In this document: positions 20,814 to 63,855 of the stretch, one piece after another
Numbering within the stretch: the stretch's first letter is position 1
Layout: each line of letters begins with the position of its first letter
DNA from: Ranitomeya imitator
Lineage: Eukaryota
Reading direction: 5' to 3'
Assembly: GCF_032444005.1 (NCBI RefSeq)
Contig: NC_091283.1
Coordinates: 629,114,001-629,178,000 of the forward strand
DNA: 64,000 nucleotides
Program-made: the position numbers and the translations under genes
Notes under the pieces: model-generated
What the model saw: only the letters and a program-made list of their open reading frames with translations
The model's database searches: none
Told to the model about the DNA's origin: nothing

Positions 20814-20984
20814 GGGACGTACTAAAAAGAATGAAGAAAAGGAATAAATAAAAAGAATGAACATAATAACTTATAGGTCCAAAGAGATGGAGAGAAGTTA
20901 TAGATTTCTTATGCATCTTGGATATGAACTGAACATAAATTATATGTAAAAAAAATTAGGAAATCAACATAGATCCCGTAAAAA

Positions 20985-21430
20985 AAGGTGTATATTATAT
21001 TCCCTGAGCTTTATAGGTGGGCAATGAACATGGAATATATGTAGATAATAGGAGAATGAACACAGATCCCATATAAACAGGTGTATAATATATTCCCTGA
21101 GCCTGATAGGTGGGGAATGAAGATGAAATATATGTAGATAATAGAAGAATGAACACATATCCCATATAAACAGGTGTATATTATATTCCCTGAGCTTTAT
21201 ATGTGGGGAATGAAGATGAAATATATGTAGAGAATAGGAGAATGAACACATATCCCATATAAACAGGTGTATATTATACTCCCTGATCCTGATTAGTGGG
21301 GAATGAACATGAAATATATGTAGAGAATAGGATAATGAACACATATCCCATATAAACAGGTGTATATTATATTCCCTGAGCCTGATAGGTGGGGAATGAA
21401 CATGAAATATATGTAGATAATAGAGGAATG
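20985..21430 (-). repeat. 93-bp satellite B, left of the young PLE insertion
   Basis: Unit TCCCTGAGCCTGATAGGTGGGGAATGAACATGAAATATATGTAGATAATAGGAGAATGAACACATATCCCATATAAACAGGTGTATATTATAT on the + strand. Confidence 0.95.
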
Positions 21431-21964
21431 GGACAAACGAAAAGAGAAAGGGTAGACTAAAAATAGTATGCACAACCCAAAATATAGAGACAATCGGTAG
21501 TACTATAAAGCAAAACACCTTTATTAAACACCTCAAAAAACATGTTAAAAACATTTAAAAACAAATGTACAAATCCCTATACCCATCATATCCCATAATA
21601 AATGACAATCCCATAATACAATAGGAAAACAGTAATATCCTACCCTAGATGCACCTAGTCACATATGCTCTCCTGCAAAAATGTGCCTATACAGGCCGCA
21701 AAGGACTCGACCACAATATGTCAGTATCCACTGCTAATAACCAAAAAATGAAACATCCATGCAATACATGGTCCTGAGATTGGAATGTGATAGCATGCTA
21801 TATAACAGCTGTGGATACAACCTGTCCTGCGTCAATTCTGGTATATGGAGATGCAGCAATGTCAAAGGGCACAGAGCACCACAAGGGTTAAATCCACATA
21901 GAGCCAGGGAACATAACAGCCCCAAAATGGCCCTGAGGTAGGAGAAGGATAAGGTGGGAGCGCA

Positions 21965-22002
21965 CCCCACGCGTATCGCTGCCTCCGCAGCTTCGTCAGG
22001 GG
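21965..22002 (-). ncRNA. Non-canonical hammerhead-like motif in pLTR (left copy)
   Basis: Mirror of 32322-32359. Confidence 0.5.
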
Positions 22003-23250
22003 AAGTGAAACTAAAGGTGCAACAGTGTGTGCTTAAATAATAAATCCAATAAGGTAAATTGCATACCGGTGTGGGAGAGAGAGAGAGAGGTAAAAGCCGG
22101 AAGACGCCGGCGACGCCATGACGACAGGAACACAATCATAATGAACGGCAATCCTAGAGCGTCCAAAGGGTCACATGCGCACGCGCAAACCGCGGTATTC
22201 CATAGGACCACGTTGCGCACGCGCCGTGCCAGCCGGCTAGATGGACACGTCATAGGACACAGGGCAAAGAGAAATGGAATAAAGCCCGAGGACCGGACTA
22301 AGCTAGCGAGGCCGGCTAGATGGACACATCATGGGACACAGAGCAGAGGGGGTGGGATAAGGACCAAAAAGCCAGAGAGGGGGGAAGGGAGGGGAAAAAA
22401 AAAAAAAAACACAACAGGTAAAAAGAGGGCAGAGTGTGCATGTTGCAGCAAGACACAGAGGCACAAGATATCCACCCGCAGAATGCCGGGAGATATCACA
22501 ATCATAGACATATACTAGTGATTAAAGGCAAAACCGCCAAAGGACACAAAAAGACAGGGCATATAAAGCCACCCAGAAAACCTGAAAGGGAGAAAGGAAT
22601 ATTATTATTGTTGGCAAGTGCACAGGTATAAGTGCACGTAAACACCTATACAGCAACCATATACAGTATGTAACAATATCAGGCAAAAAACACACACATA
22701 TATAAATATAAACAGACTGATGTCCCTTGAGTCCGTAAGTATATGTACGAGTATTCTCTCAATGCCGCTATGTAGACGTTTCCGGTCCCCAGCTTATAGT
22801 CCCATAGTCGATGAGGCCGACACCATCCAGATCTATACGAGAGAAAGCACTCTTCATCACAAGCCCCTTCCGACTTGCCAATCTCAAATGCGCATCCGAG
22901 CCCATAGTCCATAATAGGAGTTTGCCATAAAATCCGCATTGTAGCTGTGAGAGCAAAATCTCTTCTGCATAAGATGTCCTTCCATTTGCCATAATGGCAT
23001 GCCGCACATCCACCCTCCAGGGTCCACTTCATTATCTAATGTGTCAAAGACCTCTGCATCCATGTTGGTCCCCACAGTAAGCTTGTAATATCCATATCCC
23101 AATTTCCAGGGATGATCATCACCCTTTTGGGTGCGTCCTCAGCCTTCCTGAATGGAGACAAATGCAAAATTAGATATGGGCACCAAATCTGAAGGGAACC
23201 AAATCAGACGTCCCAGAAACTAAAAATACCCCAATGAATCTACGCGCCAA

Positions 23251-25776
23251 CTATCCTAGGAACCCCGTGAAGAGCAATTCCTCATTTAGGCCCATGGGTG
23301 CGACCGCCTGAAGATCGAAAATCCACCTGGACTCAGCACGCAAGAGATAGTTAGATATATTGCCACCCCTTTCGCCACAGGAAACCCTCTGTAACCCCAC
23401 AACTTGCAAATCAATGGGCGAACCCCTATGTTTCAGCAAGAAATGCGCCGCCACAGGAGTCAAGATTTTACCTTTGCCTTGGTCCGTAGCCGCCAGGCGT
23501 ATGGTTGATACGTGTTTTTGAAACCTCTTACGTAGTTCTTGGGATGTTTGCCCTACATAGATCATATTACAAGGGCAAATTAGCACATAAATAACATTTC
23601 TGCTCCTGCAGTTGATGTAAGCCTTTAACGCATGTCTGCTGGAGTTCGTGGGGTGTGTAAATATGTCCCGGGTGGGCGTCATAAAGGGGCAGACATTACA
23701 TTCCCCACAGGGGAATGATCCCTTGAGGACAATACCCCTATTAAGTTTGACCGTGGGCCTAGAAAAATGGCTCCTGGTCAACAACTGCCTCAGATTCGGG
23801 GCTCTTCTAGATGTCAATAACGGCCTATTGCTGATGACTTGTGTGGTTTGCATATCTGTTTGCAAGATCGGCCAATGTCTAGTGAGGATGTGTCTTACCT
23901 GCCCCCAGCTGTCATTATAGTCCGTGATGAACCTCGTCTGCGATTCTCGGGAACGACCCACAGGAATCAAAAGTGAGGCCTGATCATGTTGTCTTGCTTG
24001 CTGGAAAGCCGTGGCAACCACTCGTTTGGGATAACTCCTCTGTCTGAAGCGGTCCGTCAGATCCCGAGCTTGCATCAGAAAGTCTTGATCCCGAGTGCAA
24101 TTACGTCTAATGCGTAAAAATTGTCCCGTCGGGACGCCCACCTTCGTGTGCCAAGGGTGAAAACTGTTGAACTCCAAAAGAGCGTTAGTAGCAGTGGGCT
24201 TCCGGAAAAGGTCCGTGACCAGCTTGTTCCCTTGTACGAAAATTCTCAGATCCAGAAAGCTAGTCGAACTGTTGGAAATAGAGTGGGTTAAAAAGATATT
24301 ATGGGGGTTGGAATTGAGGCTGTGGATGAAATCAGTACAACCCTCCCTGCTGCCCGACCAAATAAAGAATAAGTCATCGATATAGCGATGCCAATTCCGG
24401 ACATGATGTTGATATGCCAGGGATGGGTACACAAACACCTCCTCCCACCAACCTAAGAAGATGTTTGCGTAGGTTGGTGCACATTTCGCCCCCATTGCCA
24501 CTCCAGCTGTCTGTAAATAAAATGTTCTGTCAAACAAAAAATAGTTGTGATGAAGAACAAATTTCAGCAGATCCAACAGAAAAGAATCATGCCCCCGATC
24601 TGAGTGTGACAGTTTGTCTAGGCAAAAAGTAACCGCATGCAGGCCATCACTATGCTTGATGTTGGAGTACAAAGACTCCACATCACAAGTTACCAGGTAG
24701 AATTCTCCCGGCAGTTCTATCCGTCCACAGACCTCAATAAAATGGGCAGAATCCCTTATAAAGGAGGGCAAGGCCGTGACTATTGGCTGGAAGAAGAAGT
24801 CCAAATACTCACTTGCCCGCTCGCAGATACTCCCAATGCTAGAAACAATCGGCCTTCCTGGTGGTTTCTTCTCGTCTTTATGTATCTTCGGCAACATATA
24901 AAATGTTGCCGTGACCGGATGTTCCACCCATAAATATTTTTTCTCTTGGGGCGAGATAATGCCGAAACTTAGCGTCCTGCAGAGTAAAGAGTCAAATTTA
25001 GACGCAAACACTGCCGTGGGATCTGAAGGTAATTTTTGATAGCATCTGGGGTTAGTGAGCTGTCTATTGGCCTCCTCTAAATATGCTTCAATTGACCACA
25101 GCACCACATTGCCCCCCTTATCCGCCTCTTTAATCACAAATTCCTTGTTGCTTTGTAAGTCCCGCAAGGCCCGTTTTTCGGCAAGATTAAGGTTAGAGGA
25201 TCTACCCACCTGTGTTGGCATTGCCAGAATGTCTCGTTTCACCAGCTCAAAGAATATCTTGATTGCGGGTACCAAGGAAAAGGAAGGCGTTTTAAGGGAT
25301 CTATTTCTGCCAGGGAACTTTCTTCTGGTACACCCTGATTCGTTCTCCTCCAGTAGGGCTAGTAGATCTTGAAAGGCTTGGCGCTCATCCTCAGGTATTG
25401 ATTGTAGAATATCCGGTTTTTTGTAGATAACCTGAAATGTGAGGTTCCTACAAAACAAATAGAGGTCCTTAACTAAAGTAAATTTGTCGGCCGTATGTGT
25501 GGGAGCAAAAGTTAAACCCCTCTTCAGGACGGCAAGTTCCACCGCAGTAAGTTCATATTTAGAAAGATTTATTACCTGGAGGGTGGATGTAGAGGCTCCA
25601 GAGGTCTGTTCCGTATCAGGGGGGGAGGAGGCTTGATTTATTTCCGTCTGGTTGAGTATTTGTGGGGGTAAGTCGGATTGTGGTCCCTGTGGCGCGTTAT
25701 GCGTTTTCTTGTTCCCCCTCCGTCTCCTCCCACGCCTGGTCCGTGGTCTACCTCGCTTCCGGTGGAAGATAAAAAA
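23251..25776 (-). CDS. PLE reverse transcriptase + GIY-YIG endonuclease (left copy)
   Basis: Frame is open from the slippery site at 25770-76 to the stop at 23251; translation identical to the right copy. Confidence 0.93.
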   Translation of the reverse strand, partial: FFIFHRKRGRPRTRRGRRRRGNKKTHNAPQGPQSDLPPQILNQTEINQASSPPDTEQTSGASTSTLQVINLSKYELTAVELAVLKRGLTFAPTHTADKFTLVKDLYLFCRNLTFQVIYKKPDILQSIPEDERQAFQDLLALLEENESGCTRRKFPGRNRSLKTPSFSLVPAIKIFFELVKRDILAMPTQVGRSSNLNLAEKRALRDLQSNKEFVIKEADKGGNVVLWSIEAYLEEANRQLTNPRCYQKLPSDPTAVFASKFDSLLCRTLSFGIISPQEKKYLWVEHPVTATFYMLPKIHKDEKKPPGRPIVSSIGSICERASEYLDFFFQPIVTALPSFIRDSAHFIEVCGRIELPGEFYLVTCDVESLYSNIKHSDGLHAVTFCLDKLSHSDRGHDSFLLDLLKFVLHHNYFLFDRTFYLQTAGVAMGAKCAPTYANIFLGWWEEVFVYPSLAYQHHVRNWHRYIDDLFFIWSGSREGCTDFIHSLNSNPHNIFLTHSISNSSTSFLDLRIFVQGNKLVTDLFRKPTATNALLEFNSFHPWHTKVGVPTGQFLRIRRNCTRDQDFLMQARDLTDRFRQRSYPKRVVATAFQQARQHDQASLLIPVGRSRESQTRFITDYNDSWGQVRHILTRHWPILQTDMQTTQVISNRPLLTSRRAPNLRQLLTRSHFSRPTVKLNRGIVLKGSFPCGECNVCPFMTPTRDIFTHPTNSSRHALKAYINCRSRNVIYVLICPCNMIYVGQTSQELRKRFQKHVSTIRLAATDQGKGKILTPVAAHFLLKHRGSPIDLQVVGLQRVSCGERGGNISNYLLRAESRWIFDLQAVAPMGLNEELLFTGFLG

Positions 25777-26402
25777 TCATCACTAGAGCTTTCTTCACCA
25801 CGAGGTAGAGAGGTGGATATTGTAGTTGCTGTCACGGAACCATGGCCATAGGTTCTAGTACGGCGTGGGTTACCCCTGTGCGTCCATCTATACACTGCAT
25901 TTTGCTCAAAATCAGTCCTGTCCCTAAGAAGTTTTTTACGCTTCCTGCTCGTCACCTCTACCTCATATTTGTCCAAGGTCTCTTTAAGTGTGGTCTTGAA
26001 GGTATGCACCTGTGTCCCTTCAAATGTGTTCAATTTGGTTTCCAATTCTTTAATGGAGGTCTTGGTCGCCGTAAACAGGTCTCTGTCATGCTCCAATAAT
26101 AGGTTGATAAGTATATTTGAACAGCGTGTAAGACCCTGTTCCCAAATCTGTTAAAATGATCCTGAGGGTTCCCAAGCTGGAAATATGGAGACCCTCAAAC
26201 CACGAGGTATCAAACCTAATTTCAAATACTCTTCTAGACTCCTCATGTTCCACCAGAGTCTAATCCCTGTCTTATGTGCCCTCATCAATTCTGAGCACAC
26301 ATTGGAAAAACCTGATTCTGACTCAACAGCAACCGATCCAGAAAGATCAAACACATTGGATGGTTTGGCTAGCCAGGCCGCCTCCCTAGCCTCCCAGTCC
26401 AT
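25638..26402 (-). pseudogene. PLE ORF1 with in-frame stop at 26151-53 (left copy)
   Basis: Mirror of 27922-28686. Confidence 0.7.
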
Positions 26403-26455
26403 CACCCTAAACCCGAGTATGCAAAAACCAATATGGAAAAAAAAAAAAAAAAAAT

Positions 26456-26486
<31 letters not shown>

Positions 26487-27161
26487 TACAAAATTACGCA
26501 AAAATATGCGTGTGCTGCTCCCAAAGAACACCCCGGGACACGGGGCAACAACTAGCACAAGAGTAAAGATAGAAAGGGGCGCACCAATATATAATGTCAC
26601 AGTCACCATCAAGGGGTGCAATACTTAGTCTATAAATAGAACAGGACAAACGAAAAGAGAAAGGGTAGACTAAAAATAGTATGCACAACCCAAAATATAG
26701 AGACAATCGGTAGTACTATAAAGCAAAACACCTTTATTAAACACCTCAAAAAACATGTTAAAAACATTTAAAAACAAATGTACAAATCCCTATACCCATC
26801 ATATCCCATAATAAATGACAATCCCATAATACAATAGGAAAACAGTAATATCCTACCCTAGATGCACCTAGTCACATATGCTCTCCTGCAAAAATGTGCC
26901 TATACAGGCCGCAAAGGACTCGACCACAATATGTCAGTATCCACTGCTAATATCCATGCAATACATGGTCCTGAGATTGGAATGTGATAGCATGCTATAT
27001 AACAGCTGTGGATACAACCTGTCCTGCGTCAATTCTGGTATATGGAGATGCAGCAATGTCAAAGGGCACAGAGCACCACAAGGGTTAAATCCACATAGAG
27101 CCAGGGAACATAACAGCCCCAAAATGGCCCTGAGGTAGGAGAAGGATAAGGTGGGAGCGCA

Positions 27162-27199
27162 CCCCACGCGTATCGCTGCCTCCGCAGCTTCGTCAGGGG
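27162..27199 (-). ncRNA. Non-canonical hammerhead-like motif in the central spacer (5' pLTR of left copy)
   Basis: Identical to 21965-22002. Confidence 0.5.
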
Positions 27200-27837
27200 A
27201 AGTGAAACTAAAGGTGCAACAGTGTGTGCTTAAATAATAAATCCAATAAGGTAAATTGCATACCGGTGTGGGAGAGAGAGAGAGAGGTAAAAGCCGGAAG
27301 ACGCCGGCGACGCCATGACGACAGGAACACAATCATAATGAACGGCAATCCTAGAGCGTCCAAAGGGTCACATGCGCACATGGATACTGACATATTGTGG
27401 TCGAGTCCTTTGCGGCCTGTATAGGCACATTTTTGCAGGAGAGCATATGTGACTAGGTGCATCTAGGGTAGGATATTACTGTTTTCCTATTGTATTATGG
27501 GATTGTCATTTATTATGGGATATGATGGGTATAGGGATTTGTACATTTGTTTTTAAATGTTTTTAACATGTTTTTTGAGGTGTTTAATAAAGGTGTTTTG
27601 CTTTATAGTACTACCGATTGTCTCTATATTTTGGGTTGTGCATACTATTTTTAGTCTACCCTTTCTCTTTTCGTTTGTCCTGTTCTATTTATAGACTAAG
27701 TATTGCACCCCTTGATGGTGACTGTGACATTATATATTGGTGCGCCCCTTTCTATCTTTACTCTTGTGCTAGTTGTTGCCCCGTGTCCCGGGGTGTTCTT
27801 TGGGAGCAGCACACGCATATTTTTGCGTAATTTTGTA

Positions 27838-27868
<31 letters not shown>

Positions 27869-27921
27869 ATTTTTTTTTTTTTTTTTTCCATATTGGTTTT
27901 TGCATACTCGGGTTTAGGGTG

Positions 27922-28686
27922 ATGGACTGGGAGGCTAGGGAGGCGGCCTGGCTAGCCAAACCATCCAATGTGTTTGATCTTTCTGGATCGGTTGCTGTTG
28001 AGTCAGAATCAGGTTTTTCCAATGTGTGCTCAGAATTGATGAGGGCACATAAGACAGGGATTAGACTCTGGTGGAACATGAGGAGTCTAGAAGAGTATTT
28101 GAAATTAGGTTTGATACCTCGTGGTTTGAGGGTCTCCATATTTCCAGCTTGGGAACCCTCAGGATCATTTTAACAGATTTGGGAACAGGGTCTTACACGC
28201 TGTTCAAATATACTTATCAACCTATTATTGGAGCATGACAGAGACCTGTTTACGGCGACCAAGACCTCCATTAAAGAATTGGAAACCAAATTGAACACAT
28301 TTGAAGGGACACAGGTGCATACCTTCAAGACCACACTTAAAGAGACCTTGGACAAATATGAGGTAGAGGTGACGAGCAGGAAGCGTAAAAAACTTCTTAG
28401 GGACAGGACTGATTTTGAGCAAAATGCAGTGTATAGATGGACGCACAGGGGTAACCCACGCCGTACTAGAACCTATGGCCATGGTTCCGTGACAGCAACT
28501 ACAATATCCACCTCTCTACCTCGTGGTGAAGAAAGCTCTAGTGATGATTTTTTATCTTCCACCGGAAGCGAGGTAGACCACGGACCAGGCGTGGGAGGAG
28601 ACGGAGGGGGAACAAGAAAACGCATAACGCGCCACAGGGACCACAATCCGACTTACCCCCACAAATACTCAACCAGACGGAAATAA
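27922..28686 (+). pseudogene. PLE ORF1 / N-terminal region with in-frame TAA at 28171-73
   Basis: MDWEAREAAWLA...PAWEPSGSF*QIWEQGLTRCSNILINLLLEHDRDL...STRRK*; track ORFs 27703-28173 and 28228-28686 are in the same frame. Confidence 0.7.
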
Positions 28687-31073
28687 ATCAAGCCTCCTCC
28701 CCCCCTGATACGGAACAGACCTCTGGAGCCTCTACATCCACCCTCCAGGTAATAAATCTTTCTAAATATGAACTTACTGCGGTGGAACTTGCCGTCCTGA
28801 AGAGGGGTTTAACTTTTGCTCCCACACATACGGCCGACAAATTTACTTTAGTTAAGGACCTCTATTTGTTTTGTAGGAACCTCACATTTCAGGTTATCTA
28901 CAAAAAACCGGATATTCTACAATCAATACCTGAGGATGAGCGCCAAGCCTTTCAAGATCTACTAGCCCTACTGGAGGAGAACGAATCAGGGTGTACCAGA
29001 AGAAAGTTCCCTGGCAGAAATAGATCCCTTAAAACGCCTTCCTTTTCCTTGGTACCCGCAATCAAGATATTCTTTGAGCTGGTGAAACGAGACATTCTGG
29101 CAATGCCAACACAGGTGGGTAGATCCTCTAACCTTAATCTTGCCGAAAAACGGGCCTTGCGGGACTTACAAAGCAACAAGGAATTTGTGATTAAAGAGGC
29201 GGATAAGGGGGGCAATGTGGTGCTGTGGTCAATTGAAGCATATTTAGAGGAGGCCAATAGACAGCTCACTAACCCCAGATGCTATCAAAAATTACCTTCA
29301 GATCCCACGGCAGTGTTTGCGTCTAAATTTGACTCTTTACTCTGCAGGACGCTAAGTTTCGGCATTATCTCGCCCCAAGAGAAAAAATATTTATGGGTGG
29401 AACATCCGGTCACGGCAACATTTTATATGTTGCCGAAGATACATAAAGACGAGAAGAAACCACCAGGAAGGCCGATTGTTTCTAGCATTGGGAGTATCTG
29501 CGAGCGGGCAAGTGAGTATTTGGACTTCTTCTTCCAGCCAATAGTCACGGCCTTGCCCTCCTTTATAAGGGATTCTGCCCATTTTATTGAGGTCTGTGGA
29601 CGGATAGAACTGCCGGGAGAATTCTACCTGGTAACTTGTGATGTGGAGTCTTTGTACTCCAACATCAAGCATAGTGATGGCCTGCATGCGGTTACTTTTT
29701 GCCTAGACAAACTGTCACACTCAGATCGGGGGCATGATTCTTTTCTGTTGGATCTGCTGAAATTTGTTCTTCATCACAACTATTTTTTGTTTGACAGAAC
29801 ATTTTATTTACAGACAGCTGGAGTGGCAATGGGGGCGAAATGTGCACCAACCTACGCAAACATCTTCTTAGGTTGGTGGGAGGAGGTGTTTGTGTACCCA
29901 TCCCTGGCATATCAACATCATGTCCGGAATTGGCATCGCTATATCGATGACTTATTCTTTATTTGGTCGGGCAGCAGGGAGGGTTGTACTGATTTCATCC
30001 ACAGCCTCAATTCCAACCCCCATAATATCTTTTTAACCCACTCTATTTCCAACAGTTCGACTAGCTTTCTGGATCTGAGAATTTTCGTACAAGGGAACAA
30101 GCTGGTCACGGACCTTTTCCGGAAGCCCACTGCTACTAACGCTCTTTTGGAGTTCAACAGTTTTCACCCTTGGCACACGAAGGTGGGCGTCCCGACGGGA
30201 CAATTTTTACGCATTAGACGTAATTGCACTCGGGATCAAGACTTTCTGATGCAAGCTCGGGATCTGACGGACCGCTTCAGACAGAGGAGTTATCCCAAAC
30301 GAGTGGTTGCCACGGCTTTCCAGCAAGCAAGACAACATGATCAGGCCTCACTTTTGATTCCTGTGGGTCGTTCCCGAGAATCGCAGACGAGGTTCATCAC
30401 GGACTATAATGACAGCTGGGGGCAGGTAAGACACATCCTCACTAGACATTGGCCGATCTTGCAAACAGATATGCAAACCACACAAGTCATCAGCAATAGG
30501 CCGTTATTGACATCTAGAAGAGCCCCGAATCTGAGGCAGTTGTTGACCAGGAGCCATTTTTCTAGGCCCACGGTCAAACTTAATAGGGGTATTGTCCTCA
30601 AGGGATCATTCCCCTGTGGGGAATGTAATGTCTGCCCCTTTATGACGCCCACCCGGGACATATTTACACACCCCACGAACTCCAGCAGACATGCGTTAAA
30701 GGCTTACATCAACTGCAGGAGCAGAAATGTTATTTATGTGCTAATTTGCCCTTGTAATATGATCTATGTAGGGCAAACATCCCAAGAACTACGTAAGAGG
30801 TTTCAAAAACACGTATCAACCATACGCCTGGCGGCTACGGACCAAGGCAAAGGTAAAATCTTGACTCCTGTGGCGGCGCATTTCTTGCTGAAACATAGGG
30901 GTTCGCCCATTGATTTGCAAGTTGTGGGGTTACAGAGGGTTTCCTGTGGCGAAAGGGGTGGCAATATATCTAACTATCTCTTGCGTGCTGAGTCCAGGTG
31001 GATTTTCGATCTTCAGGCGGTCGCACCCATGGGCCTAAATGAGGAATTGCTCTTCACGGGGTTCCTAGGATAG
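28548..31073 (+). CDS. PLE reverse transcriptase + GIY-YIG endonuclease (right copy)
   Basis: VINLS...KRGLTFAPT N-terminus; RT motifs LPKIHK, GRPIVS, DVESLYSNI, GVAMGAKCAPTYAN and RYIDD; Cys-rich linker CGECNVC; GIY-YIG NVIYVLICPCNMIYVGQT...RFQKH. Uninterrupted. Confidence 0.95.
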   Translation, partial: FFIFHRKRGRPRTRRGRRRRGNKKTHNAPQGPQSDLPPQILNQTEINQASSPPDTEQTSGASTSTLQVINLSKYELTAVELAVLKRGLTFAPTHTADKFTLVKDLYLFCRNLTFQVIYKKPDILQSIPEDERQAFQDLLALLEENESGCTRRKFPGRNRSLKTPSFSLVPAIKIFFELVKRDILAMPTQVGRSSNLNLAEKRALRDLQSNKEFVIKEADKGGNVVLWSIEAYLEEANRQLTNPRCYQKLPSDPTAVFASKFDSLLCRTLSFGIISPQEKKYLWVEHPVTATFYMLPKIHKDEKKPPGRPIVSSIGSICERASEYLDFFFQPIVTALPSFIRDSAHFIEVCGRIELPGEFYLVTCDVESLYSNIKHSDGLHAVTFCLDKLSHSDRGHDSFLLDLLKFVLHHNYFLFDRTFYLQTAGVAMGAKCAPTYANIFLGWWEEVFVYPSLAYQHHVRNWHRYIDDLFFIWSGSREGCTDFIHSLNSNPHNIFLTHSISNSSTSFLDLRIFVQGNKLVTDLFRKPTATNALLEFNSFHPWHTKVGVPTGQFLRIRRNCTRDQDFLMQARDLTDRFRQRSYPKRVVATAFQQARQHDQASLLIPVGRSRESQTRFITDYNDSWGQVRHILTRHWPILQTDMQTTQVISNRPLLTSRRAPNLRQLLTRSHFSRPTVKLNRGIVLKGSFPCGECNVCPFMTPTRDIFTHPTNSSRHALKAYINCRSRNVIYVLICPCNMIYVGQTSQELRKRFQKHVSTIRLAATDQGKGKILTPVAAHFLLKHRGSPIDLQVVGLQRVSCGERGGNISNYLLRAESRWIFDLQAVAPMGLNEELLFTGFLG

Positions 31074-32321
31074 TTGGCGCGTAGATTCATTGGGGTATTT
31101 TTAGTTTCTGGGACGTCTGATTTGGTTCCCTTCAGATTTGGTGCCCATATCTAATTTTGCATTTGTCTCCATTCAGGAAGGCTGAGGACGCACCCAAAAG
31201 GGTGATGATCATCCCTGGAAATTGGGATATGGATATTACAAGCTTACTGTGGGGACCAACATGGATGCAGAGGTCTTTGACACATTAGATAATGAAGTGG
31301 ACCCTGGAGGGTGGATGTGCGGCATGCCATTATGGCAAATGGAAGGACATCTTATGCAGAAGAGATTTTGCTCTCACAGCTACAATGCGGATTTTATGGC
31401 AAACTCCTATTATGGACTATGGGCTCGGATGCGCATTTGAGATTGGCAAGTCGGAAGGGGCTTGTGATGAAGAGTGCTTTCTCTCGTATAGATCTGGATG
31501 GTGTCGGCCTCATCGACTATGGGACTATAAGCTGGGGACCGGAAACGTCTACATAGCGGCATTGAGAGAATACTCGTACATATACTTACGGACTCAAGGG
31601 ACATCAGTCTGTTTATATTTATATATGTGTGTGTTTTTTGCCTGATATTGTTACATACTGTATATGGTTGCTGTATAGGTGTTTACGTGCACTTATACCT
31701 GTGCACTTGCCAACAATAATAATATTCCTTTCTCCCTTTCAGGTTTTCTGGGTGGCTTTATATGCCCTGTCTTTTTGTGTCCTTTGGCGGTTTTGCCTTT
31801 AATCACTAGTATATGTCTATGATTGTGATATCTCCCGGCATTCTGCGGGTGGATATCTTGTGCCTCTGTGTCTTGCTGCAACATGCACACTCTGCCCTCT
31901 TTTTACCTGTTGTGTTTTTTTTTTTTTTTCCCCTCCCTTCCCCCCTCTCTGGCTTTTTGGTCCTTATCCCACCCCCTCTGCTCTGTGTCCCATGATGTGT
32001 CCATCTAGCCGGCCTCGCTAGCTTAGTCCGGTCCTCGGGCTTTATTCCATTTCTCTTTGCCCTGTGTCCTATGACGTGTCCATCTAGCCGGCTGGCACGG
32101 CGCGTGCGCAACGTGGTCCTATGGAATACCGCGGTTTGCGCGTGCGCATGTGACCCTTTGGACGCTCTAGGATTGCCGTTCATTATGATTGTGTTCCTGT
32201 CGTCATGGCGTCGCCGGCGTCTTCCGGCTTTTACCTCTCTCTCTCTCTCCCACACCGGTATGCAATTTACCTTATTGGATTTATTATTTAAGCACACACT
32301 GTTGCACCTTTAGTTTCACTT

Positions 32322-32359
32322 CCCCTGACGAAGCTGCGGAGGCAGCGATACGCGTGGGG
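32322..32359 (+). ncRNA. Non-canonical hammerhead-like motif in the 3' pLTR
   Basis: CCC-CUGACGA-A-GCUGC(GGAG)GCAGC-GAUA-CGCG-UG-GGG: hammerhead geometry, but GAUA replaces GAAA and G sits at the cleavage position. Confidence 0.55.
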
Positions 32360-32977
32360 TGCGCTCCCACCTTATCCTTCTCCTACCTCAGGGCCATTTT
32401 GGGGCTGTTATGTTCCCTGGCTCTATGTGGATTTAACCCTTGTGGTGCTCTGTGCCCTTTGACATTGCTGCATCTCCATATACCAGAATTGACGCAGGAC
32501 AGGTTGTATCCACAGCTGTTATATAGCATGCTATCACATTCCAATCTCAGGACCATGTATTGCATGGATGTTTCATTTTTTGGTTATTAGCAGTGGATAC
32601 TGACATATTGTGGTCGAGTCCTTTGCGGCCTGTATAGGCACATTTTTGCAGGAGAGCATATGTGACTAGGTGCATCTAGGGTAGGATATTACTGTTTTCC
32701 TATTGTATTATGGGATTGTCATTTATTATGGGATATGATGGGTATAGGGATTTGTACATTTGTTTTTAAATGTTTTTAACATGTTTTTTGAGGTGTTTAA
32801 TAAAGGTGTTTTGCTTTATAGTACTACCGATTGTCTCTATATTTTGGGTTGTGCATACTATTTTTAGTCTACCCTTTCTCTTTTCGTTTGTCCTGTTCTA
32901 TTTATAGACTAAGTATTGCACCCCTTGATGGTGACTGTGACATTATATATTGGTGCGCCCCTTTCTATCTTTACTCT

Positions 32978-35353
32978 GATAATAGAGGAATGAACACATA
33001 TTTCATATAAACAGTTGTATATTATATTCCCTGAGCCTGATAGGTGGGGAATGAACATGAAATATATGTAGAGAATAGGAGAATGAACACATATCCCATA
33101 AAAACAGGTGTATATTATATTCCTTGAGCTTTATATGTGGGGAATGAAGATGAAATATATGTAGAGAATAGAAGAATGAACACATATCCCATATAAACAG
33201 GTGTATATTATATTCCCTGAGCTTTATATGTGGGGAATGAAGATGAAATATATGTAGAGAATAGGAGAATGAACACATATCCCATATAAACAGGTGTATA
33301 ATATATTCCCTGAGCCTGATAGGTGGGGAATGAACATGAAATATATGTAAATAATAGGAGAATGAACACATATCCCATATAAACAGGTGTATATTATATT
33401 CCCTGAGCCTGATAGGTGGGGAATGAACATGAAATATATGTAAATAATAGGAGAATGAACACATATCCCATATGAACAGGTGTATATTATATTCCCTGAG
33501 CCTGATAGGTGGGGAATGAACATGAAATATATGTAAATAATAGGAGAATGAACACATATCCCATATGAACAGGTGTATATTATATTCCCTGAGCCTGATA
33601 GGTGGGGAATGAAGATGAAATATATGTAGGTAATAGGAGAATGAACACATATCCCATATAAACAGGTGTATATTATATTCCCTGAGCCTGATAGGTGGGG
33701 AATGAACATGAAATATATGTAAATAATAGGAGAATGAACACATATCCCATATGAACAGGTGTATATTATATTCCCTGAGCCTGATAGGTGGGGAATGAAG
33801 ATGAAATATATGTAGGTAATAGGAGAATGAACACATATCCCATATAAACAGGTGTATATTATATTCCCTGAGCCTGATAGGTGGGGAATGAACATAGAAT
33901 ATATGTAGAGAATAGAGGAATGAACACATAACCCATATACACAGGTGTATATTATATTCCCTGAGCCTGATAGGTGGGGAATAAACATGAAATATGTGTA
34001 GAGAATAGAGGAATGAACACATATCCCATATAAACAGGTGTATATTATATTCCCTGATCTTGATAGGTGGGGAATAAACATGAAATATATGTAGAGAATA
34101 GGAGAATGAACACATATCCCATATAAACAGGTGTATATTATATTCCCTGAGCCTGATAGGTGGGGAATGAAGATGAAATATATGTAGATAATAGGAGAAT
34201 GAACACATATCCCATATAAACAGGTGTATATTATATTCCCTGAGCTTTATAGGTGGGGAATGAACATGAAATATATGTAGAGAATAGAGGAATGAACACA
34301 TATCCCATATGAACAGGTGTATATTATATTCCCTGAGCCTGATAGGTGGGGAATGAACATGAAATATATGTAGATAATAGAGGAATGAACACATATCCCA
34401 TATAAACAGGTGTATATTATATTCCCTGAGCTTTATAGGTGGGGAATGAACATGAAATATATGTAGAGAATAGAGGAATGAACACATATCCCATATGAAC
34501 AGGTGTAGATTATATTCCCTGAGCCTGATAGGTGGGGAATGAACATGAAATATATGTAGATAATAGAGGAATGAACACATATTTCATATAAACAGTTGTA
34601 TATTATATTCCCTGAGCCTGATAGGTGGGGAATGAACATGAAATATATGTAGAGAATAGAGGAATGAACACATATCCCATATAAACAGGTGTATATTATA
34701 TTCCCTGATCTTGATAGGTGGGGAATAAACATGAAATATATGTAGAGAATAGGAGAATGAACACATATCCCATATAAACAGGTGTATATTATATTCCCTG
34801 AGCCTGATAGGTGGGGAATGAAGATGAAATATATGTAGATAATAGGAGAATGAACACATATCCCATATAAACAGGTGTATATTATATTCCCTGAGCTTTA
34901 TAGGTGGGGAATGAACATGAAATATATGTAGAGAATAGAGGAATGAACACATATCCCATATGAACAGGTGTATATTATATTCCCTGAGCCTGATAGGTGG
35001 GGAATGAACATGAAATATATGTAGATAATAGAGGAATGAACACATATCCCATATAAACAGGTGTATATTATATTCCCTGAGCTTTATAGGTGGGGAATGA
35101 ACATGAAATATATGTAGAGAATAGAGGAATGAACACATATCCCATATGAACAGGTGTAGATTATATTCCCTGAGCCTGATAGGTGGGGAATGAACATGAA
35201 ATATATGTAGATAATAGAGGAATGAACACATATTTCATATAAACAGTTGTATATTATATTCCCTGAGCCTGATAGGTGGGGAATGAACATGAAATATATG
35301 TAGAGAATAGGAGAATGAACACATATCCCATAAAAACAGGTGTATATTATATT
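32978..35353 (-). repeat. 93-bp satellite B, continuation right of the young PLE
   Basis: Same unit and orientation as 20985-21430. Confidence 0.96.
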
Positions 35354-36570
35354 CGAAAATAAAAATCATAGAGTTCATTCATAGAGTTATGCACATGAAG
35401 TTATACTAAGGTAACAAATCTCCAGTTAGTGATTCATGGGTTACCTTATATAGCAGCGATTAGGGAGTAATCCAGTGTTCGATCTCTAGATAGTCCCGGA
35501 GAAGGGAGGGGGTTTCGCAGAAACGTTAGTGGTTGGAGTTCAGGAAGTCTTCTGGAGCGCTGTCCCGGCCGATGACAGATGCCCTCTTGCTTCTCTGGTA
35601 GGCCCTTGCGCAAGCATGGAGCACTCGTGGTAGAAGCCAGCAGTGCGCGGTGAGCGTGCAGGACCTAGCGTGATGTCAGAAATCACGTGACCAGGCACGT
35701 GACAATGTACAGAGCTCTATGTGGACTAATTCCTAAGTGTTTTGGAAAGCTCGGATTCCTTCGTCAGGGATGGTCCATTGATTGACGGAGCTGTCTTTTA
35801 TCTTCAGAGTGTGTCATGTGACATAGAATTTAGTCAGTGAAGGATAAGAGTTCTACTTCACTTTTGAGACCTCTAGGTATTAGAGTGTCTAATTCAAATA
35901 TCCATCTATTCTCTGCAAGGGACATTTGTTTAACCCCTTTCTACCATCAGATGCACTATGCCATTTGTGTGACCTGGGACCTAATTCCCATGCACGGGAT
36001 AGTACGTCACCACCAATCAGCTGTGCTCACGGAGGAAGCGCGGCCGGGTGTCAGCTGATTATCACAGCAGACATCCGGCACTATGTGCCAGGAGCGGTTA
36101 CGGACCGTTCCCGGCACTCTAACCCCAGAAACACTGCGATCCAACAAGATCGCAGCATTGCGGTGGCATAGGGAAGCATCGCGCAGGGAGGGGGCTCCCA
36201 ATGTGTTTCCTTGGGACTCTCGGAACAACACAATGTGATTGCGTTGTTCCGAGGGTCTCCTCCCTGCGGGCCCCGGAACCAAGATGGCAGCGGGGTCTTT
36301 TTGGGTCCTGTATTTTAATATTCCTTAAAATATGGCAATTTGCATTGTATTGGAAAATGATAGCGATATCTTCCCTAATGTTAGGGTCTCTCATTTTTTT
36401 TTTTATTTTGGAGTAAATTTATCCTCGGTATGTTTTCCACTAGTTCTTTTGTTTGCATCAATTGACGTTTGTCGTACCCTTTGTTGACAAATTTCTGTGT
36501 CAGAAAATCAGCCTCCTTATTAAAGTCGTGGGTCTTAGAACAATTCCTATGTGCCCGTATATATTGACTC
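35354..36570 (-). mobile_element. Old PLE remnant, left arm (3' pLTR plus RT fragment)
   Basis: 35354-35930 mirrors 37540-38099; RT C-terminal remnant INFLDLNIF...TYHKPTD in ORF 36381-36752 (that part extends into the spacer). Confidence 0.8.
35934..36310 (+). mobile_element. Truncated left end of the piggyBac-type element family seen at 55470
   Basis: TTAA|CCCCTT start; clearly similar to 55470-55850; replaces part of the left arm. Confidence 0.7.
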
Positions 36571-36879
36571 TTTGGGATGTTAATAAGACAGCTGGGGAGA
36601 TGGCAACTGTCCATTGAGGTGTAATTGTTACAATCAGTTGGTTTATGGTATGTTTGGGTCTGAATAGTTCCTTCCTCTACAAAAATGTTCAGATCCAGAA
36701 AATTAATTGATTCTGTACTCATGGTTGCCGAAAAGTTTTTTAAAAATATCATTTTTATTTATTTAAGCAATAAAATCAGTTAAAAGTTTAGGTCCACCTG
36801 ACCAGATGAAAATTATATTGTTAATAAAACGATTCCAGAGGACCAGGTTCGCCGGTAGTTCACACCCAAATAGTCAATA

Positions 36880-38099
36880 CATACAGGCACATAGGAATTG
36901 TTCTAAGAGCAACGACTTTAATAAGGAGGCTGATTTTCTGACACAGAAATTTATCAACAAAGGGTAAGACAAACGTCAATTGATGCAAACAAAAGAACTA
37001 GTGGAAAACATACCGAGGATAAATTTACTCCAAAATAAAAAAAAATGAGAGACCCTAACATTAGGGTAGATATCCCTATCATTTTCCAATACAATGCAAA
37101 TTGCCATATTTTAAGAAATATAGTGGAAAAACATTGGAGTGTCCTAAAAGAAGACAAAATCATGGGAGATCGTTTTTCAGCTCATCCCAAATGTATTTAC
37201 AAGAAAGCTATCACCAATCCCTCAATAAGTCTTCTTTCACGCTTCTTACAAGTCCGTAGAGGATTTTACCCCTGCCACAAGTGTAAAACATACAAAACAT
37301 TGCAAACAGGAAAACAATTTAATATTTCAAACGGAACCACAGAATTCACCATTAGGGATTGCATTGCATGCAATACTTCAGTAGTTATTTATTCATTAAA
37401 ATGCCCTTGCGGTAAACATTATGTGGGACATACCAAGCGCCCACTTAATGTTAGAATCAGTGAGCACTTGCGCACTGGTCTCCATATTGTTAAAAGGGAC
37501 TGGAAAAAAGGAAAATACATTAAACAAATGTCCCTTGCAGAGAATAGATGGATATTTGAACTAGACACTCTAATACCTAGAGGTCTCAAAAGTGAAGTAG
37601 AACTCTTAGCCTTCACTGACTAAATTCTATGTCACATGACACACTCTGAAAATAAAAGACAGCTCCGTCAATCAATGAACCATCCCTGACGAAGGAATCC
37701 GAGCTTTCCAAAACACTTAGGAATTAGCCCACATAGAGCTCTGTACATTGTCACGTGCCTGGTCACGTGATTTCTGACATCACGCTAGGTCCTGCACGCT
37801 CACCGCGCGCTGCCGGCTTCTAACACGAGTGCTCCATGCTTGCGCAAGGGCCTACCAGAGAAGCAAGAGGGCATCTGTCACCGGCCGGGATAGCGCTCCA
37901 GAAGACTTCCTGAACTCCAACCACTAACGTTTCTCCGGAACCCTCTCCCTCCTCCAGGACTATCTAGAGATCGAACACTGGATTATTCTCTCATCTCTGC
38001 TATATGAGGTAACCCATGAATCACTAACTGGAGCTTTGTTACCTTAGTATAACTTCATGTGCATAACTCTATGAATGAACTCTATGATTTTTATTTTCG
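36880..38099 (+). mobile_element. Old PLE remnant, right arm with decayed GIY-YIG domain and 3' pLTR
   Basis: ORF 37045-37623 contains CHKCKT and VIYSLKCPCGKHYVGHTKRPLNVRISEH; decayed hammerhead CUGACGA-AGGAA..UUCC-AAAA at 37683-37722, mirrored at 35731-35770. Confidence 0.82.
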
Positions 38100-40900: not shown

Positions 40901-41077
40901 ACCTTTTTTACGGGATCTATGTTGATATCCTAATTTTTTTTTTACATATAATTTATGTTCAGTTCATATCCAAGATGCAGAAGAAATCTATAACTTCTCT
41001 CCATCTCTTTGGACCTATAAGTTATTATGTTCATTCTTTTTATTTATTCCTTTTCTTCATTCTTTTTAGTACGTCCC

Positions 41078-53975: not shown

Positions 53976-54387
53976 ATTATACAGTTGTGCTCAAAATTTT
54001 ACATACCCTGGCAGAATTTTTGCTTTCTTTACCTTCTTTCAGAGAATATGAATGATAACTACAAAACTTTTCCTTTACTCATGGTTAGTGGTTGGGTGAA
54101 GCCATTTATTGTCAAACTACTGTGTTTTCTCTTTTTAAATCATAATGACAACCCAAAACATCCAAATGACCCTGATCAAAAGATTACATTCCCTGGTGAT
54201 TTGGGCCAAATAACATGCAGAGAAGTTGATGCAAATGGGTTTGAATGGCTACTAAAGGTAACATCCTCACCTGAGACCTGTTTGCTTGTAATCAGTGTGC
54301 GTGTGCATAAAAGCTGAGTGAGTTTCTGGGGTCCAGACAGACTTTTGCATCTTTCATCCAACCACTGACATTTCTGGATTGTGAGTC

Positions 54388-61383: not shown

Positions 61384-61884
61384 GTAAGCGCTGCTTTGAA
61401 TACTGGGGCATTATACAGTAACCAAAGGTGTAGCTAGGGTTAGGGTAGCACCTGAGTGGGCCCCTAACCAGAAAACCCTGATTACAACTATGGTGGTGCA
61501 TCCTAATTGTGGATGTAGGAGAACCTCAGCAGATGACTGTGCTGTTACTGAAAATAACCTGTGTACAAAAACCAAAACTGATATTACCGCCATATGGTGA
61601 CCATATAGTGGTAGATGCCAGTCCTGCAGAACATGTAATAGATTACAGTACAGTTACAGATAGTAACTTGCAACTTATGTTTTTTCTGATGAGTCGTTAA
61701 CTTTTCCTTTATTTCCCATCTGGCCCAGACCAACACAACAAGTTCTCCAACTACGACTCAGCTGCATAGATTACAACAAAGACACATTTGACGTCTCACA
61801 TTTCCTGTACTGTCCCCATCTGTTCCCAATTTGCACAATCTCCTCATCCTGCTGATACCACAATTCTGAGCTTCGCCCATGAAT

Positions 61885-62447: not shown

Positions 62448-62818
62448 CAGGGCCGGACTACGACAAAAAAGCAGTCCTGCCACACAGATCCCACCTGCCC
62501 CCAAACTATAACGCGTCCCACCTCAGATCTGTGAATTTTTATTTACTTTCTCCAGCGGTTTGTTTTTTTTTCAGTGCTAGAGTGACACTTTAATTGTAAG
62601 CCCCAGTGATATCCTCACCCTCCAACGTCTTCCCCGCTTTTCAGCACCGCTCCAGTCCCCCGACACCATTTTGTAGGCGCAGCTTCTGGCAGCCAGAAGT
62701 CAGAAGCTACAACACAAGCTTTCAATATAAGACTATCGATGTGAATATTTTTCTGCCCAATGATGACAGAAGTATTCTAGGAGTGATACCTTTATTGGCT
62801 AACCAGAAAATAATATGT

Positions 62819-62858
62819 TTGCAAACTTTCAGAGCACAGTGGCTCCTTCTTCAGGCAA
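62819..62858 (-). ncRNA. Hammerhead ribozyme, left arm (one substitution in stem III)
   Basis: Mirror of 63475-63514, with AGUU instead of AGCU. Confidence 0.6.
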
Positions 62859-62984
62859 GATTACAAATAGATTAATAAGAAACAAGCACATTTAAAGAAT
62901 ACTACAGGAGGACATTTGCTAGAGGGTGGGAAGTGTGATGAGTCCATAGATAAGCCAAGGTAATCAAATTAGGCATTTTCTTAA

Positions 62985-63378
62985 GGTACCTTCACACTCA
63001 GCAACTTAACAACGAGAACGACAACGATCCGTGACGTTGCAGCATCCTGGATAGCGATCTCGTTGTGTTTGACACGCAGCAGCGATCAGGATCCCGCTGT
63101 GCCATCGCTGGTCGGAGCTAGAAGTCCAGAACTTTATTTGGTCGTCAGGTCGGCGTGTATCGTCATGTTTGACAGCAAAAGCAACAATGCCAGCAATGTT
63201 TTTACATGGAGCTAACAACCAGCGAGAACGATAAGTGAGTTGCCGTTACGTCACTGGATCGCTCCTGCATCGTTCTGGTGTTGCCGTGTTTGACGTCTCT
63301 ACAGCAACCTAAACAGCGACGCTGCAGCGATCGGCTCGTTGTCTATATCGCTGCAGCGTCGCTGAGTGTGACGGTACC
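62985..63378. mobile_element. Harbinger-type MITE (shorter relative of 49577-50314)
   Basis: GGTACCTTCACACTCAGC ... GCTGAGTGTGACGGTACC. Confidence 0.8.
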
Positions 63379-63474
63379 TTTTACAAATGGAGAGGCAGTG
63401 GGAATAATGTTCTTAGTTATCTGGAGTCCGTCTGGTGGAGGTGTGAATTGTATCCATGTAGTGACTCATAAATC

Positions 63475-63514
63475 TTGCCTGAAGAAGGAGCCACTGTGCT
63501 CTGAAAGCTTGCAA
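63475..63514 (+). ncRNA. Minimal type I hammerhead ribozyme
   Basis: UUGC-CUGAAGA-A-GGAGC(CACUGU)GCUCU-GAA-AGCU-U-GCAA: intact core, palindromic stem III. Confidence 0.78.
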
Positions 63515-63855
63515 ACATATTATTTTCTGGCTAGCCAATAAAGTTATCACTACTAGAATACTTCTGTCATCATTGGGCAGAAAAATATTCACATCGATTT
63601 TTCGAACACGGTACCACAATACAATTTGTTATTGTACATCAATATAAGACTACGAGAGCCAGAATGAGGCCAGGACGAAGCTCTCATAGAGTTGTACTGA
63701 AAAGTGACCTCTGCGCAGCTCCATGAAACAATAGATCTGCGAGGAGGTCACTTTTCACAAGAGACAAACCGGAGCGATGCTGGAAACCACTGAAGGCAGC
63801 GTAAGGAGAGTACAAGACAGGGGTCTTACATGTAAAGTACCACTCCAGTGCCATA

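What the first reader, a model, noticed from the sequence alone, without database searches (positions are those of the whole stretch)
20814..63652. Recurrent two-ended PLE integration: three unrelated families, one architecture
Young (15-bp TSD), old (9-13-bp TSD) and miniature (14-bp TSD) insertions all have 3' ends facing outward, 5' ends fused centrally and a single TSD. This suggests a regular pathway in which both 3'-OH ends of a staggered GIY-YIG cut prime reverse transcription from a 3' end, on two RNAs or on one re-used RNA (PLE RTs lack RNase H). That differs from L1 twin priming, where the arms copy non-overlapping parts of one RNA. It would be a systematic generator of long palindromes in frog genomes.
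Basis: inference. Interest (0 to 1): 0.8.

Follow-up and report, generated by a model that had tools for sequence, protein, structure and literature searches.

The report
Head-to-head Penelope retrotransposon insertions, frog
Three jumping-gene insertions in this poison-frog DNA each consist of two back-to-front copies inside one target duplication, which is the long-described insertion style of Penelope-like retrotransposons rather than a new architecture.

Summary
Three insertions have inverted arms with 3' ends outward, 5' ends joined centrally, and one target-site duplication (TSD).

- **Young:** 21431-32977, 15-bp TSD, arms identical over 5,513 nt.
- **Old:** about 20815-41077, 9-13-bp TSD, arms 94.5-96% alike.
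- **Miniature:** 62736-63638, 14-bp TSD.

The young and old elements encode Penelope-like (PLE) reverse transcriptase plus GIY-YIG endonuclease. The three share no nucleotide similarity. The PLE identity of the miniature rests on layout alone.

The layout is not new. An inverted 5'-truncated copy, a partial tandem (pLTR), a one-sided 3' "tail" and a single TSD are the published PLE insertion structure (PMC8557442, PMC3846280, PMC8969392). A purified PLE protein cleaves and extends both target strands in vitro, from two RT start sites that define the tail (PMC11167929).

Priming from both nicks is therefore the best explanation, and the window adds one argument for it. In the young dimer each arm holds sequence the other lacks (84-nt tail on the right; 436 nt of extra 5' sequence on the left), so neither arm copies the other.

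Sequence alone cannot show the mechanism. The scan has noted the same geometry many times elsewhere in this genome.

The parts
21416..21430 (.). Left copy of the 15-bp TSD (GATAATAGAGGAATG) of the young dimer
   Evidence: identical 15-mer at both junctions; satellite phase is continuous once the insert and one copy are removed
21431..27379 (-). Young PLE1 left arm. It holds a full 5,213-nt unit lacking the last 84 nt (21431-26559), plus an 820-nt upstream partial copy (26560-27379). The inner 436 nt of that partial copy are absent from the right arm and carry a 16-nt deletion.
27380..27380 (.). Single extra A at the head-to-head junction, templated by neither arm. The join is blunt, with no palindrome and no microhomology.
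   Evidence: junction context compared with the unit sequence
27381..32977 (+). Young PLE1 right arm: a 384-nt upstream partial copy (27381-27764, identical to 32594-32977) plus a full 5,213-nt unit (27765-32977)
32894..32977 (+). 84-nt 3' 'tail', present at the outer end of the right arm only. It is also present at the internal tandem junction of both arms (27681-27764 and its mirror).
28782..31073 (+). RT plus C-terminal GIY-YIG open frame (763 aa from GTG; the frame is open from 28548). The mirror copy lies at 25542-23251 on the - strand.
32978..32992 (.). Right copy of the 15-bp TSD of the young dimer
20803..20814 (.). Left copy of the old dimer's TSD (CCCCACCCATGA; readable as 9-13 nt) in the 29-bp host satellite
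20815..36864 (-). Old PLE2 left arm, interrupted by the young dimer. It comprises a 142-nt unique 3' terminus; the 93-bp satellite array (20957-21430 plus 32993-35354, 30.6 copies); a core with RT remnants (36837-36465); and 288 nt of extra 5' sequence (36577-36864).
36865..41077 (+). Old PLE2 right arm: core with the GIY-YIG region remnant (37078-37614), the 93-bp satellite array (38099-40923, 30.4 copies), and the unique 3' terminus
41075..41086 (.). Right copy of the old dimer's TSD. It overlaps the last 3 nt of the inverted terminus.
62722..62735 (.). Left copy of the 14-bp TSD (TCAATATAAGACTA) of the miniature dimer
62736..62862 (-). Miniature left arm (127 nt)
62863..63470 (.). Centre of the miniature: about 205 nt of non-palindromic sequence, plus a nested repeat with its own inverted ends at about 62983-63385
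63471..63597 (+). Miniature right arm, 97% complementary to the left arm. It contains a CTGAAGA...GAAA hammerhead-like core at 63479-63506.
63598..63638 (+). 41-nt one-sided tail between the right arm and the TSD
63639..63652 (.). Right copy of the 14-bp TSD of the miniature dimer

Best explanation
Each of the three blocks is the product of a single integration event of a Penelope-like retrotransposon. For the miniature, this would be a short non-coding RNA mobilised by PLE machinery. All three sit in the layout already described for this class.

**Most likely mechanism (inferred, not shown here)**
1. The GIY-YIG endonuclease makes nicks on both strands, 9-15 nt apart.
2. The 3'-OH of each nick primes reverse transcription near the 3' end of element RNA. 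This leaves two antisense cDNAs growing toward each other.
3. The two RT start sites differ, one including the 'tail' and one internal to it, which gives the one-sided tail.
4. The template RNA is longer than one unit, so each arm carries a pLTR.
5. The two cDNAs are joined at their 5'-side ends by an end-to-end template jump or by end joining. In the young dimer this left one untemplated A.
6. Fill-in of the staggered target gives the single TSD.

**Shown here:** the anatomy, the TSDs, the arm orientation, the arm overlap and the private segments.

**Inferred:** the order of events, the number of RNAs used and the joining step.
For: - **Coding capacity.** RT and GIY-YIG are in one frame with no RNase H hit. 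The YIDD, GVAMG and IY...YVG motifs are visible in the translation. There are 445 homologues at E<=1e-20, mostly frog proteins named RT or GIY-YIG domain proteins, with the best at 99% identity from Ranitomeya imitator.
- **Old element.** Its remnants match the same protein at E 1.5e-17 and 9e-14, on opposite strands.
- **TSDs.** They are phase-checked in two satellites. The 14-mer is unique among ten inverted pairs tested.
- **Partial tandem.** The young arms are each more than one unit long, with an exact 384-nt direct repeat.
- **Private segments.** Each young arm holds sequence the other lacks.
- **Satellite arrays.** The old arms hold 30.6 and 30.4 satellite copies. Their best alignment is in the colinear register (94.5% against at most 93.8% when shifted).
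- **Literature, layout.** The same layout with a one-sided tail and 8-10-bp TSDs is published.
- **Literature, mechanism.** The PAc protein cleaves and extends both top and bottom strands. It initiates at two internal sites that bound the tail, and it is predicted to be a dimer.
Against: - No experiment or read-level data here shows two priming events.
- The published in-vitro work does not itself link both-strand extension to inverted copies. Arkhipova et al. 2013 favoured self-priming on an antisense template.
- The old dimer has symmetric ends with no tail.
- No canonical hammerhead was found in any of the three.
- The central junction of the young dimer could not be confirmed independently. 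Public short-read contigs stop at 27379 and continue with the canonical unit.
- The PLE affiliation of the miniature is architectural only.
Confidence: 0.62

Rival explanations
1. **Snap-back or self-priming.** A single cDNA, or a cDNA made on an antisense transcript, folds back on itself and copies itself to make the second arm. This is the model favoured for rotifer PLEs by Arkhipova et al. 2013.
For: - Head-to-head arrangement with identical arms.
- The literature reports palindromes at inverted junctions in Adineta vaga PLEs.
- An asymmetric centre could be read as a fold-back loop.
Against: - In the young dimer the right arm has an 84-nt tail that the left lacks, and the left arm has 436 nt that the right lacks. 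Neither arm can therefore be a straight copy of the other.
- The junction is blunt with one extra A, and has no palindrome or overlap.
- The same one-sided tail is seen in the miniature.
Confidence: 0.15
2. **Two successive insertions.** A second PLE copy homes into the 5' end of an earlier copy in inverted orientation. PLE endonuclease is known to cut its own pLTR sequence.
For: - The PAc RNP nicks its own pLTR-ORF junction in vitro.
- PLEs do nest: the young dimer sits inside the old one.
Against: - One TSD brackets the whole dimer in all three cases, and no second TSD is present.
- The young arms show 0 differences in 5,513 nt, although the family is heterogeneous. About 30% of the contig pieces laid from the two deeply sampled runs, X3 and X4 (one sample), differ by 1-5%.
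- The young arm 5' ends do not coincide with a known cleavage site.
Confidence: 0.06
3. **Assembly artefact (young dimer only).** The perfect 5.5-kb palindrome was produced by a chimeric or fold-back long read.
For: - The arms are 100% identical.
- No public contig bridges the 27379/27381 junction.
- PLE inverted structures are known to trouble assemblies.
Against: - The centre is asymmetric by 436 nt, the tail is one-sided, and a clean phase-consistent 15-bp TSD sits in the flanks.
- Two older dimers of the same design, with diverged arms, lie in the same window and cannot be artefacts.
- Short-read contigs drop single-copy junctions of high-copy repeats, so one search is uninformative.
Confidence: 0.05
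4. **The miniature (62736-63638) is unrelated to PLEs.** It would instead be a terminal-inverted-repeat DNA transposon or a chance hairpin repeat.
For: - It has no nucleotide similarity to either PLE in the window.
- It gives no Rfam hammerhead even at E<=10.
- Its fold is no better than shuffled sequence (z = +0.96 and +0.47).
- Several true TIR transposons lie nearby.
Against: - A 14-bp TSD is longer than those I recall for the known DNA transposon superfamilies (from memory, not tested here).
- The right TSD copy is separated from the inverted repeat by a 41-nt one-sided extension, which is the PLE 'tail' signature.
- A CTGAAGA...GAAA core with a helix II stem is the only such motif in 64 kb. 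It occurs on the outward-reading strand of each arm, where 0.22 are expected by chance.
Confidence: 0.2

Closest known systems
Canonical EN+ Penelope-like element insertion layout (Evgen'ev & Arkhipova 2005; Arkhipova 2006; Craig et al. 2021 Fig. 2; for example Pen2a_Av of Adineta vaga, PMC3846280)
   Same: - A single RT plus C-terminal GIY-YIG frame.
- A partial tandem forming pLTRs.
- An inverted 5'-truncated copy abutting the 5' end.
- An optional extension ('tail') at one end only.
- One TSD of variable length around the whole unit.
   Different: - Here the inverted copy of the young dimer is itself longer than a full unit (1.14 and 1.07 units), where the literature usually shows a short pLTR-sized stub.
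- The tails are 84 and 41 nt, against the usual 30-40.
- There is no palindrome or overlap at the inverted junction.
- No canonical hammerhead was detected.
- One family carries a 2.8-kb 93-bp satellite array inside each arm.
PAc (Poseidon of Anolis carolinensis) in-vitro system, Frangieh et al. 2024 (PMC11167929)
   Same: - It supplies the biochemical basis: both target strands are cleaved and extended.
- RT starts at two internal sites whose spacing equals the genomic tail.
- The template is multi-unit RNA.
- The protein is predicted to be a dimer.
   Different: - The paper does not connect both-strand extension to inverted genomic copies.
- It reports no difference in start site between strands, whereas two of the three dimers here have the tail on one arm only.
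- The frog elements were not tested biochemically.
L1 twin priming
   Same: - The second nick's 3'-OH also primes reverse transcription.
- The result is an inverted segment inside one TSD.
   Different: In twin priming the two segments are adjacent, essentially non-overlapping parts of one RNA. Here both arms contain the same sequence from the 3' end inward (5,513 nt of overlap).
Non-LTR retrozymes, the non-autonomous PLE derivatives of amphibians (bioRxiv 10.64898/2026.07.22.740005)
   Same: The miniature is short and non-coding, and it carries a hammerhead-like core. Frog genomes are rich in such PLE-dependent elements.
   Different: - Retrozymes are described as direct tandem arrays with type I hammerheads, whereas the miniature is an inverted dimer.
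- Its ribozyme is unconfirmed.

Membership tests
Penelope-like elements (EN+, C-terminal GIY-YIG) | Reverse transcriptase domain with catalytic motifs | tested here: met
   - Young element: Pfam RVT_1 at E 0.0016, below the gathering score, but the LVTCDVESLY, GVAMG and YIDD motifs are visible.
- There are 445 homologues at E<=1e-20, many carrying PF00078.
- Old element: tblastn to the young protein at E 1.5e-17.
Penelope-like elements (EN+, C-terminal GIY-YIG) | GIY-YIG endonuclease fused C-terminal to the RT in the same frame | tested here: met
   - PF01541 at residues 650-688, E 4.7e-4, 20.8 bits against a cut-off of 22.6, so marginal by Pfam.
- The VIYVL...MIYVGQT...R...E...N pattern and an upstream Cys cluster are visible.
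- Relatives are named GIY-YIG domain proteins.
- Old element: the region matches at E 9e-14, but there is no Pfam hit.
Penelope-like elements (EN+, C-terminal GIY-YIG) | Partial tandem organisation (pseudo-LTR) | tested here: met
   - Young: an exact 384-nt direct repeat at a spacing of 5,213 nt in the right arm, and 736 nt of repeat in the left arm.
- Not assessable in the 5'-truncated old arms or in the miniature.
Penelope-like elements (EN+, C-terminal GIY-YIG) | Inverted 5'-truncated copy at the 5' end, with one TSD around the whole insertion | tested here: met
   All three blocks.
Penelope-like elements (EN+, C-terminal GIY-YIG) | Optional short 3' 'tail' at one end only | tested here: met
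   - Young: 84 nt on the right arm only.
- Miniature: 41 nt on the right arm only.
- Old: symmetric ends, differing by 4 nt at most.
Penelope-like elements (EN+, C-terminal GIY-YIG) | Hammerhead ribozyme motif in the pLTR | tested here: inconclusive
   - No Rfam family at gathering score over the whole window.
- None at E<=10 in the young pLTR or in the miniature.
- The pattern scan finds a CUGANGA...GAAA core only in the two miniature arms, and the fold is no better than shuffles.
- As I recall, minimal PLE hammerheads fit the Rfam models poorly.
L1-type twin priming product | The inverted and direct segments are non-overlapping parts of one template | tested here: not met
   The arms overlap over their whole shared length: 5,513 nt in the young dimer, about 3.6 kb in the old, and 127 nt in the miniature.
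TIR DNA transposon / MITE (considered for the miniature) | A short TSD directly abutting both terminal inverted repeats | tested here: not met
   The 14-bp TSD abuts the left arm, but lies 41 nt beyond the right arm. No short repeat abuts both ends.
Non-LTR retrozyme (considered for the miniature) | Direct tandem units, each with an active type I hammerhead | tested here: not met
   The arrangement is inverted, not tandem, and the ribozyme is unconfirmed.

The most novel reading that the evidence does not exclude
One RNA molecule is copied twice during a single integration.

**Proposed sequence**
1. The first nick primes at the internal start site.
2. The second nick can then prime only on the still single-stranded RNA 3' of that site, that is, at the distal start site.
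3. The second RT re-copies the same RNA by strand displacement.

**What this would explain**
- Why the tail is on one arm only.
- Why the arms of a fresh dimer are identical (0 differences in 5,513 nt) in a heterogeneous family.
- Why PLEs, which lack RNase H, systematically produce long palindromes.

**Testable prediction**
Tail/tail dimers should be essentially absent. The arms of young dimers should never differ by subfamily-diagnostic variants.
Probability: 0.25. Interest if true: 0.55.

Novelty: new member of a known kind. Interest (0 to 1): 0.3.

Why it matters
For PLE specialists these are very clean natural records of a poorly understood integration reaction.

- The young dimer preserves both RT start points, both cDNA end points and a blunt junction, with no later mutations.
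- Its complementary private segments favour two priming events over snap-back copying.
- A genome-wide census of such dimers could discriminate between one-RNA and two-RNA models.

On the practical side, the window shows that PLE insertions create kilobase-scale perfect palindromes. They also carry whole satellite arrays to new sites in inverted pairs. Both matter for assembly and repeat annotation of large frog genomes.

It does not reveal a new architecture. The layout and the both-strand priming activity are already published.

Tried and rejected
1. **Read-level check of the young dimer's central junction.** I ran the look-up of sequencing runs and read laying. All four runs are short-read contig sets. 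Their contigs stop at 27379 and continue with the canonical unit sequence, so the junction was neither confirmed nor refuted. The runs show only that the family is high-copy and heterogeneous.

2. **Small census of other genomic copies.** I used the look-up of encoding contigs with a 99%-identical Ranitomeya protein and with a full-length relative. No DNA was returned because the assembly files are too large.

3. **Hammerhead ribozymes.** Rfam at gathering score over the whole window and at E<=10 on the young pLTR and the miniature gave none. A stringent pattern scan gave none. A relaxed scan found only the miniature's motif, and folding gave no support.

4. **A possible fourth dimer at 3264-17686** (inverted arrays of a different 93-bp satellite). 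This was rejected. The centre and outer flanks are not mirror images, and the centre holds a Tc1-type transposase HTH fragment.

5. **Other inverted pairs between 43 and 62 kb.** They have no long TSDs and look like ordinary TIR transposons.

6. **Literature searches for an explicit 'both nicks prime, hence inverted copies' model**. None was found in the searchable library. The 2005 and 2006 reviews and Pyatkov et al. 2004 are not in it, so priority cannot be excluded.

7. **Complex prediction for a protein dimer.** Not run. Two full-length copies would exceed the size limit, and the N-terminal region is interrupted.
Full report
**1. What is there**

The window holds a nested set of repeats. 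A 29-bp satellite (18542-19375, 20690-20814, 41075-42940) was hit by an 'old' element. That element was later hit by a 'young' one. A third, small insertion lies at 62.7 kb.

**2. Young dimer**

- The repeat finder reports inverted arms of about 5.5 kb. Base by base, 21431-26943 and 27381-32893 are identical at all 5,513 positions. The two reported mismatches are the boundary bases.
- The insert is 21431-32977. It is flanked by GATAATAGAGGAATG at 21416-21430 and 32978-32992.
- The host here is a 93-bp satellite, so I checked its phase. The left flank ends so that phase 12 should follow. The right flank after the second TSD copy starts at phase 12, and with the TSD included it starts at phase 90. 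This is a true 15-bp duplication and not periodicity.
[quoted passage not shown] It lies on the - strand on the left (25542-23251) and the + strand on the right (28782-31073). The 3' ends therefore point outward.
- Homologues number 445 at E<=1e-20. Most are frog proteins, and the best is 99% identical, from Ranitomeya imitator. The genome is a poison frog or a close relative.
- Each arm is longer than one unit. In the right arm 27381-27764 equals 32594-32977 exactly, at a spacing of 5,213 nt. This is a pLTR-type partial tandem.

The arms are not mirror images at either end.
- The right arm ends with 84 nt (32894-32977) that the left arm lacks. Both arms contain these 84 nt at their internal tandem junction.
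- The left arm runs 436 nt further 5' (26944-27379). This stretch is 430/431 identical to unit positions 21752-22182 and carries a 16-nt deletion.
- The join is blunt, with one extra A at 27380 and no palindrome.

**3. Old dimer**

- Between the two inverted arrays of the 93-bp satellite lies a 2.7-kb core (35355-38098). Its halves match the young protein on opposite strands. The left half is 36837-36465 (-), residues 384-507. The right half is 37078-37614 (+), residues 538-761.
- The satellite-to-core boundaries are mirror-symmetric. The arrays hold 30.6 and 30.4 copies.
- Beyond each array lies the same unique terminus of about 142 nt (141 nt aligned, 99.3% identical).
- The satellite is therefore part of the element. 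The inverted structure runs from 20815 to 41077.
- With the young insert removed, the arms align colinearly at 94.5% over 3.56 kb. Every shifted register is worse, at 93.8% or below. The unique core parts are 95.4-96.4% alike.
- The flanks are CCCCACCCATGA on both sides. The 29-bp host repeat continues in phase after the second copy.
- The left arm extends 288 nt further 5' than the right (36577-36864).

**4. Miniature**

- TCAATATAAGACTA flanks 62736-63638. Chance expectation for a 14-mer in these search windows is about 5e-5.
- The arms are 127-128 nt and 97% complementary.
- The left TSD abuts its arm. The right TSD lies 41 nt beyond its arm.
- The centre holds about 205 nt of non-palindromic sequence, plus a nested repeat.
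- There is no similarity to either PLE and no Rfam hammerhead.
- A CTGAAGA…GAAA core with a short helix II is the only such motif in the window. It occurs once per arm on the outward strand, but the fold is no better than shuffles.
- The PLE link of the miniature is therefore architectural.

**5. How this compares with what is known**

- Craig et al. 2021 describe the layout. [quoted passage not shown]
- Arkhipova et al. 2013 show rotifer copies with two direct pLTRs and one inverted pLTR, a 31-bp one-sided tail and 8-10-bp TSDs. They propose self-priming on an antisense template.
- A TE-curation guide lists inverted pLTRs as a PLE peculiarity.
- Frangieh et al. 2024 purified an Anolis PLE protein. 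[quoted passage not shown] RT starts at two internal sites whose interval is the tail, and the protein is predicted to dimerise.
- The recurring architecture is therefore established.

**6. Mechanism**

- The geometry fits dual target-primed reverse transcription. With nicks that leave 3' overhangs of 9-15 nt, the cDNA on the top strand makes a minus-oriented left arm. The cDNA on the bottom strand makes a plus-oriented right arm. Fill-in then gives one TSD.
- The window's own contribution is that each young arm has private sequence. This is hard to reconcile with one arm being copied from the other.
- The tailed and tail-less ends correspond to the two published start sites.
- Identity of the arms (0 in 5,513) within a heterogeneous high-copy family suggests the same source RNA, or even the same molecule.
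- A one-RNA, two-pass scheme would explain why the tail is one-sided. I rate it possible but unproven.
- Rivals are snap-back copying, sequential homing and misassembly. They are weighed in the Rival explanations section.

**7. Verdict**

- The scan's own notes list many similar dimers elsewhere in this genome. They are unverified, but they agree that the pattern is common.
- An earlier follow-up on another locus reached the same 'known layout' reading.

Noticed in passing
window 20957-21430, 32993-35354 and 38099-40923: The 93-bp satellite arrays, about 30.5 copies (2.8 kb) per arm, lie inside the old PLE. They sit between its core and a unique 3' terminus of about 142 nt. Retrotransposition of this family would therefore move whole satellite arrays and deposit them as inverted pairs.
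   Followed up: partly
window 27922-28707 (mirror in the left arm): Single-ORF relatives of 987-1058 aa align across the young element's N-terminal region. Against them it shows an in-frame stop at 28171-28173 and a change of frame somewhere between about 28554 and 28707. The stop and frame change are identical in both arms. Either a disrupted RNA was mobilised in trans, or the family uses recoding, since another note proposes a -1 frameshift.
   Followed up: partly
window 26944-26952, compared with 21731-21751: The upstream partial copy of the left arm lacks 16 nt (ACCAAAAAATGAAACA) that its own downstream unit has. The 5' end of the right arm maps only 9 nt from this point. Contigs of runs X1 and X13 carry the 16 nt. 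Contigs of run X3 at this place do not, at word depth of about 338, so the deletion may be a multi-copy subfamily variant.
   Followed up: partly
window 3264-8908 and 12951-17686: Two arrays of a different, unrelated 93-bp satellite (60.7 and 50.9 copies) lie in inverted orientation around a 4-kb non-palindromic centre. The centre contains a Tc1-type transposase HTH fragment (10460-10882, - strand; PF01498, E 1.5e-10). This is not a PLE dimer.
   Followed up: partly
window 35934-36317: In the old left arm, 384 nt of an unrelated repeat replace the 398 nt that encode the endonuclease region in the right arm (37122-37519). The repeat has a 78.5% similar copy at 55465-55831.
   Followed up: partly
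window 19376-20690: A 1.3-kb unique block interrupts the 29-bp satellite just left of the old dimer. It has no similarity to the three elements and no clear TSD, and its identity is unknown.
   Followed up: partly
window 62983-63385 and 49576-49744: A nested repeat with its own inverted ends (GGTACCTTCACAC...) sits in the centre of the miniature dimer. An 85% similar partial copy lies at 49.6 kb.
   Followed up: no
window 57461-59677: A tandem repeat of 391-bp units (5.7 copies, 87% matches) lies between inverted 160-nt Tc1-like ends at 53979-54138 and 60284-60443.
   Followed up: no
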